64,000 nucleotides of DNA from Botryllus schlosseri. Its lineage: Eukaryota. Where the stretch lies: assembly GCA_051294905.1 (NCBI GenBank), contig CM119373.1, forward strand, positions 15,624,001 through 15,688,000. Reading direction: 5' to 3'. The position numbers were made by a program, and so were the translations under genes. Positions 10,669 to 17,501 of the stretch are shown in pieces (the first letter of the stretch is position 1; the number at the start of each line of letters is the position of its first letter). The notes beneath the pieces are model-generated. The model was not told where the DNA came from. It ran no database searches and saw nothing but the letters and a program-made list of their open reading frames with translations.

Positions 10669-10934
10669 GATTACATTACATTACATTAATTACATTTTTA
10701 GCATTGAGTAATTGTAATTGTAATGTAATTGAAACATGGAAGTAATTGTAATTGTAATTGAATTAAAATATTGTAATTGATCCAACTCTGGTAGGTAGCC
10801 TATATAAGAGCCACTGTGATTGTGGCTATACGTGGGAAGAACGTCACAATCAATGTTCCCGTAGTGCTGACACGGTCTCTGCGCACAGAAAATCTAAGCT
10901 GTCCACAAAAAATCTGAAGTGATGACTTTATTTT

Positions 10935-11520
10935 TAGTCGTTACGCACCGTAGTCTGAGTTCGTGAGTGCGCGCAGACTCGTGAAAAATGATAGTGGACA
11001 TTGGTCACAACGTTTCCAGAAACGCACAACGCAGCATTTCCCTAAATTTATTAGAACACGCTCATCACGCTCGTAAAAAAAACTCACCCTTGACTCATGC
11101 CCTGAAACTGGAATCACAGCATGCAAAGCCCATGAATTCTGCTATTGGCGAACACTTGTTGGATATTCGCGTTTGTGTGAATAATTATCGAGAAGACAGA
11201 TTTCGCGTTGTCGGGAGGGGTTGTTCACACTTTCACTTGTGTGACTTGGAGTCGACTTTTATGAAAACACGCCAGCCAAGGCTGTGTGTCACCAGAAGGA
11301 GCTCGTCTACCATCTAAAATAGTTCATTGACCACTCTCTTATTGTAAATTTCATAACGATGACGTCATATTTTGGGAGACGATTGTTGATATATAATGTT
11401 CTTTCCAATTATCTATTAGTTGTTGCTGACGGATTACCAGTGACGAGTGTCAGCCGAACATATTAATATGCTATTCAATTGTATATAGAAGTTCTGTACC
11501 TCCAAAAAGCTCTTTGAAGC
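10935..11520 (+). mobile_element. Penelope-like element 3' fragment (GIY-YIG endonuclease C-terminus plus 3' region)
   Basis: SAIGEHLL...C...Y..D.F.VV...FHL..LE..F.K...P.LC, then HQKELVYHLK after a frameshift. The downstream ~230 bp is homologous to 44180-44410 and ~27200-27350. Confidence 0.8.
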
Positions 11521-11582
11521 ACACATTTAGTTCAAAATGCAATCCATATAATTACCTTATTTCGGCACTTCTTGCGCATACT

Positions 11583-11679
11583 TCACCATGCACAGTTTGA
11601 TGGCGGCTTGAAGTATGGAATCCGGAGCCATAAATAGTTAGTGGCGGCAATCCAACATGCACTGTTATCGGCAGCTCCA
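11583..11679 (-). CDS. Predicted small secreted protein, exon 3 (IGAADNSACWIAATNYLWLRIPYFKPPSNCAW*)
   Basis: Preceded by a 71-nt T-rich intron (11680-11750) with GTCAGT donor, CTGAC branch-like site and ACAG acceptor. Phase 2 matches exon 2; TGA at 11583-11585. Confidence 0.7.
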
Positions 11680-11750
11680 CTGTTCGTAAATCAAAGTCAG
11701 GATTGTACACAAAGTGCAGCAAATTACGAAAATGAAATGAGTGTACTGAC

Positions 11751-11943
11751 ATGCAAGTCGACGAGGAAACGTCTCTGTACCACTTCGTATCCCGAATGAC
11801 CATGTCGACTACAGACTGCAGCGAGTTCAGGACGCCACTGGATGATTCGACAAGCTCATCGCATTCCCCGAAAAAATTAGCCAGTTCTTGCGCGAGATGT
11901 GGCGCTTGTCTTTTCTTTCTTCTTCCCCAACGTGGGTGGCATC
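11751..11943 (-). CDS. Predicted small secreted protein, exon 2 (GCHPRWGRRKKRQAPHLAQELANFFGECDEL...VSSSTC)
   Basis: AG acceptor at 11944-11945; the frame opens only just upstream of the acceptor; phase 1 in and phase 2 out; polybasic RRKKR site. Confidence 0.72.
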
Positions 11944-12341
11944 CTAATGGTAAGTATGTACGTTATGTGTTTGGGATTTTTCACAGGCAACGAGTTGATG
12001 ATATAGAAAAAAATATTCAACTTGACATCGGGCGTTAGTGTCTCACTCATAATCATAATGCTTGAAACACAATTGAAGAAAGAGACATGGTATTTAATCA
12101 AGATGGTGAAGCTCTTGTAAATTTATTATGATGTATTTATGCCGAGTGCCGAGTCAACTCACGGCGGTAATATCAATTCTACGTTTGGTCACGGACTCAG
12201 GGGATGGTTAATTGTCCTATAAATATGCAATTAGGAATCTGTAGTCCTCTATGCAAATACTGATACTATATTGCCCCTTGGACAAAAATAAACTACGTCC
12301 TTTCCTTTCCTGTGGCTTAATAGGCCGTAGCCCTACGAGAG

Positions 12342-12663
12342 CAGTGGTTCTCAATGTTTTTTCGACACGACCTATTTATGATAGTGTAAAATTTCACGCC
12401 ATCTTATCGTCGCGAAAATCTTTCTTAAATTCTCATCAGCAATTGAACGAACTGCCTCGCACCGCCGATACATCATATCAGCCTGATTTCAAACATCTTG
12501 CAGCCCATGTGGAGCCGTATTACCAGCAGCCCGTATCAGCACACAATAATAAATTTCATTCCATAGTCTATATTTCATTGTTTCATCATTTATTTTTAAT
12601 TTTTTTGGTCGCGTCCTATTTCAGGCGAAAATGTTTTACATGCGTCTCGCGGATGAAACCCCT
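12342..12663 (+). mobile_element. Degenerate hAT (Buster/Charlie-like) MITE in intron 1 of the secreted-protein gene
   Basis: CAGTGGTTCTCAA left end; internal RTADTSYQPDFKHLA resembles a Buster-type transposase C-terminus; no TSD. Confidence 0.5.
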
Positions 12664-12767
12664 GACTCATAGCTTAACATATAGTTCAATTACCCTATAA
12701 TTTTAATCATATAATACAGTTAAAGGGAAAGTAAATAACGAATGCAAATACAAGTTGTAGAGTATAT

Positions 12768-13266
12768 CAGCGGCGGGCAACATACGGCCCGCGGGATGGA
12801 TCCGACCCGCAGCGGGATTTTGAGCGGCCCGCGGACAGCTTCCAGCGTTACATGATAATGTGGCTCACGGCTCGAATCTACATGCATTGGCGTGCAAACG
12901 TTTTTGAACATTAGCATTTATTAGACGAAGCTGCATTCCAATCGAACTAATGTTCAAGTGCAGTCGTTGCTAAGGGGCTGTAGGCCTACGTCCAACATGC
13001 AGCCAGAGTTCAAAGAACTTGTTGACAACTTCGATAGACCACATATATCTCATTGACTTCAAGAGATTTTGAAGTACATTACTTGATAATTTCATTGGCT
13101 ACTGTTTTTGATCTGTATGCTTTACGCTTGAAATTAACATTAATACGATTTGTTTTTTATATAGGTGGATAAATACGCAAAAAATGTATCGATTCGGGAA
13201 TCCGGCCCGCCAAGTGCTTTATTGGTTCATATCCGGCCCGCCGACAGGAGAAGTTGCCCGCCCCTG
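12768..13266 (+). mobile_element. hAT (Buster/Charlie-like) MITE retaining the transposase C-terminal codons
   Basis: CAGCGGCGGGCAAC ... GTTGCCCGCCCCTG; TSD GAGTATAT / GACTATAT; internal SNMQPEFKELVDNFDRPHISH*. Confidence 0.85.
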
Positions 13267-13490
13267 GACTATATGGTGCTCACAGAGCAACATCAACAAT
13301 GATATATTCTACAGTCCTTCATTGCGAACCGATTTGTTAAGTAGAAATTAAATGTGAATGTCTTGCCCGCCCTCAAACATCATCTAATTAAGAGACTAAT
13401 CATATAGCATAGGCTACCCATCAATCCTATAAATTAGCAAGTTTTGGCGTTCCATTTGCATTCTATAACATAATATATGTCGTACATTAC

Positions 13491-13554
13491 CGTTACACAG
13501 GTCCAAAGCTACAAGTAACGCTACTCCAAGAACAATGACTGCCTTCACAGGCAT
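13491..13554 (-). CDS. Predicted small secreted protein, exon 1 (signal peptide MPVKAVIVLGVALLVALDLCN)
   Basis: ATG in AGCAACATG context; basic residue plus hydrophobic core; donor G/GTAATG, phase 1. Confidence 0.72.
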
Positions 13555-13584
13555 GTTGCTTTTCTTTGCATCGAGGTGCGAAAG

Positions 13585-13619
13585 ATGACTGCACTGCGTG
13601 AGAGCCTTGAAGGCTTATA
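13585..13619 (-). promoter_or_regulatory. Candidate TATA box plus initiator for the secreted-protein gene
   Basis: Minus-strand TATAAG (13614-13619) lies 29 nt upstream of the A in an Inr-like GCAGTC (13590), which is 36 nt before the ATG. Confidence 0.5.
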
Positions 13620-14055
13620 TGCAATACGTAAATTCAGACACGTTTTACTACGGCGACGGGTGGGCGATAATATCACCAAATAGCATCAACTGCAGAATAT
13701 CTAAGGAATGTGTTTCAGTGTTATTATAATTTTAATATTGGCCGTTTTTGGGCGATGTTTGTAGACATGTTTATGTCTAAATGATCGAGTTTTTTATGTT
13801 GTTTCTTCAGCCATTTCCAGGAATTTAATACATGCATTCAGGAAATAAGTATATAAAAAAGCCTTACCAAAATTCTCGAGCGCTCTCCGTATCGTTCGAC
13901 CTCACGAGGTTGCTTCAAACTATGTAAAATAGTAAATGTAAGCCTAATATTTTCTATTCTTATTACCAACCAAAAAAGGCATGAACAGATTGTGTAGATC
14001 GCCCGTAGAATACATATGTCCTTCATTAAATATTGTACCAACCGAGGGTAGACAT

Positions 14056-14992
14056 TAGGGATGGTGTGAACCTCTGAAAGGTTCAGGTTCGTGTGAACGC
14101 GAACCTTTTTGAAAGGTTCTGTGTGAACGCGAACGTGAACCTCGTGACGTCATATTGCTAATTCCAACCCCATCTTTCAATGAAGTGATAGCCTATATTA
14201 ATGTACACGATACCTAGCGACGACTCGGGCCACATAATGCCACAATGCTGAAGTACATTTTGGCGTTTTAAACGTCGCTAAATGTATCAATTGAGGCAAT
14301 CAAATGATATAATACTCCCATAAAATCAATATCATCCGTCGCTTTGCCAATAATTTCGACGAGGAGTTGCCAGGGAATATAAGCTTACGCCTTAACGGTC
14401 TTGACCAGACCGGACATGCATGTATTCGGTGCATGAGTATTGCTACATTGATATTGAGCAGAGTGTAAAACAGGTTTTTACACTTGCTACCGATATTAGG
14501 CTACCCCAAAAGGTAGCCAACACTTTAATCGCACGGGTTTGGACTTAATGATACTGTAAACATATGAAGTGAAGATTGACCCCGTACGCTAGCAAGATTT
14601 GTTACATCAAAAAACGATATCGATCTAATTGATTGGTTGAATAAGCATCATTCGCTTTCTACATGTTATGTATGTCGCTCGTGATGTTGTGTGATTGCGG
14701 GTCGAGCTCACAGCAGAGAGTCACTAAATATTCACAAACGGGAAGTTGGATATTTCAAGCAAAATTTTGTAACAATCTTTGAGATTGTCAAGGTGAATGC
14801 TCGGTTAGAGTTGGTTTTTTGTGCTGCCGACGTCATTCATAGAGTGGCCCGCCGTTGAAATGCAATAAATTCGAACCAAGTATGTCATTATGAAGTGAAA
14901 ATTGTAATATACGAAAAAGGTTCACAGTGTAGAGCCTTCCCGAGGTTCACACACAGAACGCGAACGTGAACCTCGCGTTCACACCATCCCTA
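14056..14992. mobile_element. hAT (Ac-type, TAGGG termini) non-autonomous element
   Basis: TAGGGATGGTGTGAAC ... GTTCACACCATCCCTA; subterminal GAACGCGAAC repeats; TSD GTAGACAT / GTAAACAT. Confidence 0.9.
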
Positions 14993-16605: not shown

Positions 16606-17501
16606 CAGTGTTGGGATCAAGTCACTACCTTCGAGTCACGAGTCATTTCGAGTCATTGCACATTTTGACTCGAGTCAAGTCAAGTCAATCGATTTTCAAA
16701 TATGACTCATGTCAAGTCAAGTCACTCCATTTTTGGAGGTGACTCGAGTCAAGTCGAGTCAAGTCAAGTCACGAGTCAAGTCAAAATTCAAGTCAAGTTG
16801 CCTTTTCGAAGTATGAGGCATGATAACGTCATTGCATTTTGCTAGCTGTCTGATATACAGATTTAGTGTTCATTGATTTTGAACCGATGAACGCATATAG
16901 AGTTAAATATACACCAAGAAGGCGCTGTATCGATCACATGTAAGTTCAACTGCTAAACCTCAGTTTATAGTTACCAGCCAAGATAGAGAATATAGATACG
17001 AATTGATAAGATGCAATACATTGCGCATTTACAAATCGATATGATAGGCTACAATTCGAGCCAGCGCCAATGGTTGAGGACTATATAAACTATATTCGAA
17101 TTGAGTTTCAATAAAACAAGAGGTTTGGTTAAGGTAAAAACAGAGAACAAAATTTACTTTACTATACTAGTTTACGACAACGTAAGCTGTAAGCTTCGAT
17201 CAAGTCGTTTGCGGTCAATTCATTTGTGAGAGCATAATGGAGGCTCAGTAAAACGCACGATCATTAAATGATTGGTCGCTCTCACGGGTTACACCAGCGT
17301 TTGGCGAACAATACGAACATATGCAAGATGCAGTGATTTTGATCAAAGCCGATTACTTGATGACTTGAAATTGACTCGTGAATTTTGCTCCGAGTCACGA
17401 GTCAATCCACATTTCTGATAAGCCGAGTCAAGTCAAGTCAAGTCATTTTAGCAAAGTGATTCGAGTCAATTCAAGTCTTGACTCGAGTCATTCCAACACT
17501 G
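16606..17501. mobile_element. hAT-like element with GACTCGAGTC/AAGTC subterminal arrays
   Basis: CAGTGTTGG(G/A)AT termini; perfect 8-bp TSD CTTTTAGG. Confidence 0.9.

What the first reader, a model, noticed from the sequence alone, without database searches (positions are those of the whole stretch)
11583..13619. Hidden three-exon gene for an unrecognised 117-aa secreted precursor
Seen: joining 13554-13491, 11943-11751 and 11679-11583 at GT-AG sites gives MPVKAVIVLGVALLVALDLCNG-CHPRWGRRKKR-QAPHLAQELANFFGECDELVESSSGVLNSLQSVVDMVIRDTKWYRDVSSSTCIGAADNSACWIAATNYLWLRIPYFKPPSNCAW*. Phases match (1, 2) and there is a TATA/Inr pair upstream. The ORF track shows only fragments of it. Established: hydrophobic signal peptide architecture, R-x-K-R furin-type cleavage, and N-terminal Gln often cyclising to pyroglutamate. 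Inference: an 84-aa, probably helical, two-disulfide mature peptide (hormone, pheromone or defence peptide). I cannot place it in any family. The gene remains intact in heavy TE debris, which suggests selection.
Basis: partly seen in the sequence, partly recalled or inferred. Interest (0 to 1): 0.82.

Follow-up and report, generated by a model that had tools for sequence, protein, structure and literature searches.

The report
Front end of tunicate secreted-protein gene
The three exons are real and transcribed, but they are only the first three exons of a longer gene from an uncharacterised tunicate-only family of furin-cut secreted proteins, and the reading frame of this copy is broken in exon 3.

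Summary
One contig of a public run skips intron 2 exactly, so the locus is transcribed and spliced.

It is not an orphan hormone gene. Exon 2 has at least 17 paralogues in this genome. Its only database relatives are uncharacterised tunicate proteins (Styela, Ciona) of 160-1190 aa. All share one plan: signal peptide, a Cys right after it, an R-x-K/R-R site, helical four-Cys module 1, usually a second furin site, module 2, then EGF, WxxW, TIL or TSP1 domains.

Paralogues, tunicate homologues and the RNA contig all carry one more base at 11629/11630.

In the family frame a TAA (11559-11557) sits one base before a conserved donor. Exons 4 and 5 (second furin site, module 2) lie about 22 kb further on, outside the window.

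Most likely this is a recently truncated or decaying family member, which would still yield signal peptide, pro-peptide and module 1. No Pfam family and no solved or predicted fold matched the modules.

The scan's notes for this genome held nothing else on this family.

The parts
13614..13620 (-). TATA-like box (ATATAAG) in a promoter block conserved with the nearest paralogue
   Evidence: Sequence. The block TGCATAT..AAGCCTTCAAGGC aligns with paralogue L025 upstream of its exon 1. The transcription start was not mapped.
13491..13554 (-). Coding part of exon 1: the signal peptide (Met1 to the first base of the Gly22 codon); donor ACG|GTAATG, phase 1
   Evidence: The paralogue has a homologous exon 1 with an identical donor. 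No read or contig covered it.
11944..13490 (-). Intron 1 (1547 nt, GT..AG), mostly repeat copies
   Evidence: Repeat-like multi-copy coverage at 12201-12382 and 12929-13292. The junction was not observed directly.
11751..11943 (-). Exon 2: Cys23, pro-peptide, the R-R-K-K-R site, and the first two thirds of module 1 (FFG.C ... IRDT.WY ... C)
   Evidence: Covered by the X23 contig over 11751-11939. The donor position two bases after the Cys codon is shared by at least 11 paralogues.
11680..11750 (-). Intron 2 (71 nt, GT..AG), confirmed as spliced out
   Evidence: The X23 contig joins 11679 to 11751 ('skips 71', ends CT..AC on the + strand).
11556..11679 (-). Exon 3: the last third of module 1. 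It ends at a conserved donor G|GTAAT (phase 1 in the family frame)
   Evidence: The contig alignment runs exactly to 11556 and then leaves the stretch. The paralogue has its donor at the same place.
11629..11630 (-). Site of a 1-nt deletion relative to the family: the assembly has TTTATGG where the RNA contig and paralogue have TTTATTG.
   Evidence: one base put in behind 11629; paralogue L002/L025 continues in the other frame; the homologue P0003 reads ...KYLLDRNSPFF..ANCMVKWA.
11583..11585 (-).
11557..11559 (-). TAA in the family frame, one base before the exon-3 donor; the paralogue has GCA (Ala) here. It ends the ORF at 126 codons (...KYAQEVPK)
11291..11563 (.). High-copy repeat that begins just beyond exon 3. 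It is not part of the gene but marks where homology to the paralogue ends (about 11513) and where the 22-kb intron 3 starts

Best explanation
The stretch holds the promoter and exons 1-3 of a multi-exon gene from a tunicate-restricted, uncharacterised family of secreted precursor proteins. The family plan is: signal peptide; a Cys exposed at the new N-terminus; a short pro-peptide ending in R-x-K/R-R; helical four-Cys module 1; usually a second R-x-K/R-R site; helical four-Cys module 2; then variable extracellular domains. Inferred mechanism: signal peptidase cuts after Gly22, and a furin-type convertase cuts after Arg33 and releases module 1. In full-length relatives a second cut separates module 1 from module 2 and the C-terminal domains. 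This particular copy is damaged. In the family frame a TAA sits one base before the exon-3 donor. Exons 4 and 5 lie about 22 kb away, outside the window, and would follow in frame. So the locus can at most make signal peptide, pro-peptide and module 1. I read it as a recently truncated, probably decaying paralogue. Sub-claims: belongs to the family and is incomplete as a three-exon model, about 0.95; tail is a frameshift product, about 0.9; copy is non-functional or on its way there, about 0.55.
For: Model and splicing. Family in the same genome: 18 loci on 7 contigs, none with internal stops in exon 2. Database relatives are all tunicate 'uncharacterized protein' entries (Styela clava, Ciona savignyi, Ciona intestinalis) or transcript-derived proteins. 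In them the domain sits directly after the signal peptide of 160-1186-aa proteins that carry EGF, Mucin2_WxxW, TIL or TSP1/LDL-receptor domains. Frame: the paralogue continues ...NYLLTLDSTLQAATKICMVKWAQQ in the frame the window only reaches with one extra base. The RNA contig has that base. P0003 aligns in the same frame. Continuation: exon-4 and exon-5 homologues lie at C3:15613564-15613695 and 15613401-15613499, on the same strand and 21.9 kb beyond the donor. They have a matching acceptor phase and a second RRKR site. Signs of damage: the TAA; an invariant Cys changed to Ser in exon 4 and a 30-nt in-frame deletion in exon 5; dN/dS about 1.07 for the tail; zero reads on the exons in three bulk RNA runs, and only one contig of depth about 5 in X23. 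Fold: the AlphaFold2 model of a homologue's two modules is all-helical, with mean pLDDT 79 and pTM 0.77.
Against: Several results point to retained constraint. Of 9 listed differences between the RNA contig and the assembly, 6 are synonymous and 3 are not (by my hand binomial, 6 or more of 9 synonymous has a chance of roughly 0.015-0.05 under neutrality). dN/dS against the paralogue is 0.40 for residues 23-102 and 0.39 for exons 4+5. Relative-rate counts are not significantly skewed: 8 vs 4 in module 1 and 4 vs 4 in module 2. The truncated ORF ends only about 6 codons before the second furin site. It therefore encodes almost exactly the module-1 polypeptide that processing of a full-length precursor would release, so it could be functional. 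The exon 3-to-4 junction, the intron-1 junction and the TAA in the RNA allele were not seen directly. The 1-nt deletion could be an assembly error. Signal-peptide and furin cleavage are inferred from sequence only.
Confidence: 0.6

Rival explanations
1. Functional short gene. The TAA is old and fixed, and the locus now encodes a 126-aa precursor (in the allele without the deletion) that yields only the furin-released 93-aa module-1 polypeptide. That would be a small secreted protein born by truncation of a multidomain precursor. The frameshifted 117-aa version would be a null or variant allele.
For: The 6:3 synonymous excess among allelic differences. Core dN/dS of 0.40. The transcript is present and correctly spliced. 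The stop falls just before the second furin site, so module 1 is kept whole. The contig alignment runs through the TAA to 11556 without being clipped, which suggests the divergent allele has the TAA too (this is an inference).
Against: Exons 4+5 show the same dN/dS (0.39) as the part still translated, so most of the constraint dates from before the truncation. The tail after the indel site has dN/dS about 1.07. A frameshift that removes the fourth invariant Cys is present in the reference haplotype. Expression is barely detectable. A stop upstream of further splice junctions would normally expose the mRNA to nonsense-mediated decay (general knowledge; not tested in this animal).
Confidence: 0.27
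2. Full-length functional family member. The 1-nt deletion is an assembly error or a rare allele and the TAA is haplotype-specific, so other alleles encode signal peptide, module 1, module 2 and C-terminal domains.
For: The RNA contig lacks the deletion. Apart from the TAA, exons 3, 4 and 5 are in frame with conserved splice phases. dN/dS of exons 4+5 is 0.39 and relative rates are balanced.
Against: The TAA differs from the paralogue's codon at two bases and appears to be shared by the RNA allele. The invariant Cys of module 2 is Ser.
Confidence: 0.1
3. One reading: a complete, family-less three-exon gene for a 117-aa prohormone, pheromone or defence-peptide precursor with an 84-aa pyroGlu peptide kept intact by selection.
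For: The ORF, splice sites, signal peptide and furin site exist. Intron 2 is spliced.
Against: It has a large family and long homologues. The tail is out of frame relative to all relatives and to the RNA contig. Downstream exons exist. The Gln is not conserved.
Confidence: 0.03

Closest known systems
Uncharacterised tunicate proteins: Styela clava XP_039252381.1 (LOC120329695), XP_077975153.1 and XP_039251446; Ciona savignyi H2YVX0; Ciona intestinalis LOC100177026 and LOC101243400
   Same: They have a signal peptide ending in Gly/Ala followed by Cys, then a polybasic R-x-K/R-R site. Module 1 shares the invariant F, C, D..W, C, CW and C positions (tblastn to the window 34-46% identity, E down to 2.4e-12; profile E 1.9e-17). 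They usually have a second furin-type site and then module 2.
   Different: They are 285-501 aa (other family members reach 1186 aa) and carry EGF, TIL or other Cys-rich C-terminal domains. The ORF of the window copy stops inside exon 3. None has a described function, and a full-text search for their locus names and accessions found no paper.
Nearest paralogue in the same genome, 52 kb downstream on the same strand (G000:C3:15581192-15584257 and upstream exon 1; loci L002, L025, L042)
   Same: The promoter block, exon 1, exon 2 (68% aa identity), intron 2, exon 3 and all splice positions are homologous at the DNA level (73% over 640 nt). It has the same shortened module 2.
   Different: The paralogue has an uninterrupted frame through exons 1-5, a 2.5-kb rather than 22-kb intron 3, and keeps the module-2 Cys.
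Proprotein-convertase-processed secreted precursors in general (prohormones, and pro-regions of matrix and mucin-type proteins)
   Same: A signal peptide plus R-x-K/R-R sites that bracket a folded segment. The logic of releasing pieces from one precursor is the same (sequence; established knowledge of furin specificity).
   Different: There is no sequence or fold relation to any of them. No short conserved amidated peptide is evident, and cleavage is untested.
Hedgehog and Spitz-type ligands with an N-terminal Cys exposed by signal peptidase (a lead from memory, not tested)
   Same: A Cys is the first residue after the predicted signal-peptide cut in every family member, followed within a few residues by basic residues.
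   Different: There is no homology. N-acylation was not tested. Here a furin site would detach the Cys-bearing peptide from the folded module.

Membership tests
Tunicate signal-peptide / Cys / furin / module-1 / furin / module-2 family (unnamed; Styela LOC120329695, Ciona LOC100177026 and relatives) | Significant sequence similarity of module 1 to family members | tested here: met
   The window exon 2 matches P0003 at E 2.4e-12 and P0002 at E 1.8e-10 by tblastn. A profile of the genome's paralogues hits Styela proteins at E 1.9e-17 and 3e-13 among 1.84 billion representatives.
Tunicate signal-peptide / Cys / furin / module-1 / furin / module-2 family (unnamed; Styela LOC120329695, Ciona LOC100177026 and relatives) | Signal peptide whose predicted cut (small residues at -3 and -1) exposes a Cys at +1, followed by R-x-K/R-R | tested here: met
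   The window has ...LDLCNG|CHPRWGRRKKR|Q. The same layout is present in 8 close paralogues and in the database homologues. Cleavage itself is inferred; SignalP and ProP were not available.
Tunicate signal-peptide / Cys / furin / module-1 / furin / module-2 family (unnamed; Styela LOC120329695, Ciona LOC100177026 and relatives) | Four invariant Cys of module 1 (FF..C, ...C, .CW., ...C..W) in one reading frame | tested here: not met
   The first three are present in the assembled frame. The fourth (KLCMVKY) is reached only in the family frame, after the 1-nt deletion site at 11629/30. It is met in the RNA-contig allele.
Tunicate signal-peptide / Cys / furin / module-1 / furin / module-2 family (unnamed; Styela LOC120329695, Ciona LOC100177026 and relatives) | Conserved exon structure: phase-1 junction in the Gly/Ala codon before the Cys; phase-2 donor two bases after the second Cys codon; phase-1 donor after module 1 | tested here: met
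Tunicate signal-peptide / Cys / furin / module-1 / furin / module-2 family (unnamed; Styela LOC120329695, Ciona LOC100177026 and relatives) | Second furin-type site and module 2 downstream, in frame | tested here: inconclusive
   Both are present 21.9 kb downstream (..YRRKR|STEY.., YPSL.., locus L043) with matching phase, but they lie behind the TAA and one invariant Cys is replaced by Ser. The splice from exon 3 to exon 4 was not observed.
Neuropeptide / peptide-hormone precursors | A short conserved bioactive peptide flanked by dibasic sites (often with Gly for amidation); expression in neurons or endocrine cells | tested here: not met
   The conserved part is a 90-100-aa folded helical module inside long multidomain proteins. 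The peptide between signal peptide and furin site varies from 5 to about 25 residues with only the Cys fixed. The site of expression is unknown.
Known helical disulfide folds (saposin-like, helical cytokines and others) | Structural match of the predicted module to a solved or predicted member | tested here: not met
   Foldseek against PDB: best E 0.95. AlphaFold DB clusters: best E 0.42. VIA-align against 48,161 chains: best Z 3.5. ESM Atlas: TM at most 0.30. PDB sequence profile and Pfam: nothing. A weak search result does not prove a new fold.

The most novel reading that the evidence does not exclude
The family is a tunicate invention: polyprotein-like secreted precursors whose two helical four-Cys modules have a fold not yet seen elsewhere, are bracketed by furin sites, and sit in front of shuffled adhesive or receptor-type domains. 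The invariant Cys exposed by signal peptidase might serve as a lipid or disulfide tether that furin cleavage releases. On this reading the window copy would be a natural experiment in which a nonsense mutation just before the second furin site has turned a multidomain precursor into a small stand-alone secreted module-1 protein, that is, the birth of a peptide-like gene by truncation.
Probability: 0.2. Interest if true: 0.55.

Novelty: new member of a known kind. Interest (0 to 1): 0.3.

Why it matters
For annotation, the locus should not be entered as a 117-aa orphan prohormone. It is the 5' part of a paralogue of a lineage-restricted family, with a frameshifted tail in the reference haplotype and a premature stop.

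More broadly, the work exposes a tunicate-only family that nobody appears to have described. It has at least 18 loci here, plus members in Styela and Ciona. Its two N-terminal modules match no Pfam family and no solved or predicted fold found here, are flanked by convertase sites, and are combined with EGF, WxxW, TIL, TSP1 or LDL-receptor domains.

That family is a reasonable target for expression mapping and structure work in ascidians, and is more interesting than this damaged copy.

Tried and rejected
1. Word-indexed protein search with the exon-2 open frame found no candidate. The exact product is not in that collection.

2. Looking for module-2 or C-terminal exons inside the window found none on either strand. 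For a while this suggested a 3'-truncated partial duplicate. A whole-genome search then found exons 4-5 outside the window, so that idea was rejected.

Exons beyond exon 5 are therefore unknown.

4. The top HMM hit P0001 (7162 aa, E 4e-28) and P0007 and P0013-P0019 are spurious. They are sums of many 6-10-bit matches in repeat proteins.

5. Profile-profile comparison gave no support for modules 1 and 2 being internal duplicates (probability 4%).

6. Searches by ESM Atlas features, Pfam and PDB sequence, and four fold libraries, found no relative.

7. Literature searches for the family, by topic and by locus names, found nothing relevant.

8. Earlier notes of this scan hold nothing on this family.

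9. Three raw-read RNA runs (X6, X7, X8; about 1-1.5 billion letters sampled from each) gave zero depth on the exons. This shows low or tissue-restricted expression, not absence.

10. The spliced protein was not folded or searched as a whole.
Full report
**Observation.** On the minus strand, 13554-13491, 11943-11751 and 11679-11583 join into a 354-nt ORF.
- The donors are ACG|GTAATG and CAT|GTCAGT, the acceptors are ..CCATTAG| and ..CGAACAG|, and the phases are 1 and 2.
- A TATA-like ATATAAG lies at 13620-13614.
- The plain ORF list shows only fragments of this gene.
- The description is therefore accurate.

**Transcription.** Both run searches listed only runs of one coded organism. Four runs were laid on 11200-13900.
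- In X23 (assembled contigs, probably RNA) one 363-nt contig of depth about 5 lies on 11556-11679 and 11751-11939. It skips exactly 11680-11750 (CT..AC on the + strand, GT..AG on the gene strand), so intron 2 is confirmed.
- The genome holds no intron-less copy, so the contig must come from spliced RNA.
- The contig differs from the window at 14 bases (about 4.5%) and has one extra base behind 11629.
- Its alignment stops exactly at 11556, with 28 more letters that do not lie on the stretch. At the other end 21 letters are unaligned.
- Three raw-read RNA runs gave no reads on the exons; their coverage is confined to repeat copies.
- Expression is therefore low or restricted. The intron-1 junction and whatever follows exon 3 were not seen.

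**A family, not an orphan.** The 63-aa exon-2 peptide finds 13 further open frames in the same 495-Mb genome. The best, at 68% identity, lies 52 kb downstream on the same strand.
- A profile of eight copies (A1) finds 18 loci on contigs C2, C3, C4, C7, C11, C12 and C14.
- All start with Gly/Ala-Cys. After 5-60 residues comes R-x-K/R-R, then ..L..FF..C......S..S..D..[IV]RD..W[YF]......C.
- In at least 11 copies the donor sits two bases after the last Cys codon.

**Database relatives.** The same profile, run against 1.84 billion protein representatives, gives 19 hits.
- Eight are spurious sums of tiny repeat matches.
- The other eleven carry the domain directly behind a signal peptide, in proteins of 115-1186 aa.
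- The named ones are 'uncharacterized protein' entries of Styela clava and Ciona savignyi. A second search adds two from Ciona intestinalis. The rest are transcript-derived.
- The genome is therefore very probably a tunicate's. The 4.5% allelic divergence fits what is known of such animals (my own knowledge).
- Pfam sees only EGF, Mucin2_WxxW, TIL and TSP1/LDL-receptor domains in the C-terminal halves, and nothing in the first 250 residues or so.

**The C-terminus is out of frame.** After ...CWIAATNYL the paralogue continues LTLDSTLQAATKICMVKWAQQ in a frame the window reaches only with one more base.
- The homologue P0003 reads ...KYLLDRNSPFFRSTANCMVKWA there.
- The RNA contig carries the extra base.
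- Read with X at the break, the family frame gives ...NYLXAPDSILQAAIKLCMVKYAQEVPK and then TAA at 11559-11557. The paralogue has GCA there.
- One base later comes the donor G|GTAAT, which is conserved in the paralogue.

**The gene continues outside the window.** No further family exon lies in the 64 kb.
- The paralogue's exon-4 and exon-5 peptides, however, match G000:C3:15613564-15613695 (61% identity) and 15613401-15613499 (64%). Both are on the same strand, 21.9 kb beyond the exon-3 donor.
- No other exon-2 copy lies in between.
- Locus L043 shows a pyrimidine-rich acceptor in the right phase, then ..GWYRRKR|STEYKSKTQGCVDKN..YPSL.. and a conserved donor, followed by exon 5.
- Apart from the TAA, the ORF would run on in frame.
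- In this copy the invariant module-2 Cys (H..[YF]CR) is Ser, and exon 5 has a 30-nt in-frame deletion relative to the paralogue.

**Family architecture and mechanism.** Across the alignment, module 1 has invariant F, C, D, W, C, CW and C positions, and module 2 has four invariant Cys.
- By my reading of the sequences, most members have a second R/K-x-K/R-R site in the linker between the modules.
- An AlphaFold2 model of P0003 residues 27-265, built with 37 family rows, is all-helical. Mean pLDDT is 79, pTM 0.77, and both modules are near 90.
- No fold relative was found: Foldseek against PDB had best E 0.95; AlphaFold DB clusters best E 0.42; VIA-align best Z 3.5; Atlas TM at most 0.30; and the PDB sequence profile gave nothing.
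- The two modules are not detectably related to each other.
- Inferred sequence of events: signal peptidase cuts after the small -3/-1 residues and exposes the Cys, and a furin-type convertase removes the short Cys peptide. Where a second site exists, it separates module 1 from the rest. None of these cleavages was tested.

**State of this copy.** Against the paralogue, Nei-Gojobori dN/dS is 0.40 for residues 23-102, 1.07 for the tail in the family frame, and 0.39 for exons 4+5. dS is about 0.4-0.6.
- Relative-rate counts with other paralogues as outgroups are 8 vs 4 for module 1 and 4 vs 4 for module 2. Neither is significant.
- Of 9 listed allelic differences, 6 are synonymous.
- The gene was therefore constrained along its whole length for most of its history, and the stop and the deletion are recent.
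- The truncated ORF still covers all of module 1 and ends about 6 codons before the second furin site.
- I put about 0.55 on a decaying or null copy, about 0.27 on a functional module-1-only gene, and about 0.1 on an intact full-length allele existing elsewhere.

**Novelty.** The locus is a damaged member of a lineage-restricted secreted-protein family whose members already sit in databases without name or literature. The family itself, with its two modules that match no known family or fold, is the more interesting object.

**Limits.**
- Only one read-laying run was available.
- The kind of run X23 is a guess by the tool.
- Five of the 14 contig differences were not listed.
- The presence of the TAA in the RNA allele is inferred only from the unclipped alignment.
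- Sequence beyond exon 5 could not be fetched.
- The spliced protein itself was neither folded nor searched as one piece.

Noticed in passing
window 11291-11563: A high-copy repeat starts just beyond the exon-3 donor. All four runs cover it at 90-95% likeness with many loose ends (summed word depth in X23 up to about 5800). Homology to the paralogue ends at about 11513.
   Followed up: partly
window 12201-12382 (intron 1): A second repeat block. In run X6 more than 130 reads end in A-runs behind 12309-12311, like the 3' end of a retroposon or SINE transcribed from other copies.
   Followed up: no
window 12770-13292 (intron 1): A third repeat block with GC-rich ends (GGGCGGGCAAC... near 13262 and ...GTTGCCCGCC near 12775 on the minus strand) that look like short terminal inverted repeats of a MITE. 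The repeat finder at minimum length 16 did not report them.
   Followed up: partly
window 16606-17477, 14058-14239, 1065-1232 and 10860-11005: These stretches share 77-89% DNA identity with sequence flanking the paralogue 52 kb away (L025 7606-8709, 9178-9370, 8040-8210). The same transposon families populate both loci.
   Followed up: no
G000:C3:15581192-15584257 plus upstream exon 1 (loci L002, L025, L042), outside the window: A tandem paralogue on the same strand with an uninterrupted frame through exons 1-5 and only a 2.5-kb intron 3. Both copies share a shortened module 2 compared with the C14 and C4 paralogues.
   Followed up: partly
G000:C4:24523860-24524042 and C4:24653329-24653514 (L030, L031): Two family copies lack the Cys that closes exon 2 (...SSSEDQY...SDSGYRY), and for one of them no later exons were found. 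They are probably further decayed members.
   Followed up: no
Proteins P0021 and P0012 (Ciona): Their C-terminal part ends in a ..CHFCC.GDLCN.. pattern, which by eye resembles a Ly6/uPAR three-finger domain. This would be another C-terminal partner for the two N-terminal modules. It was not tested.
   Followed up: no
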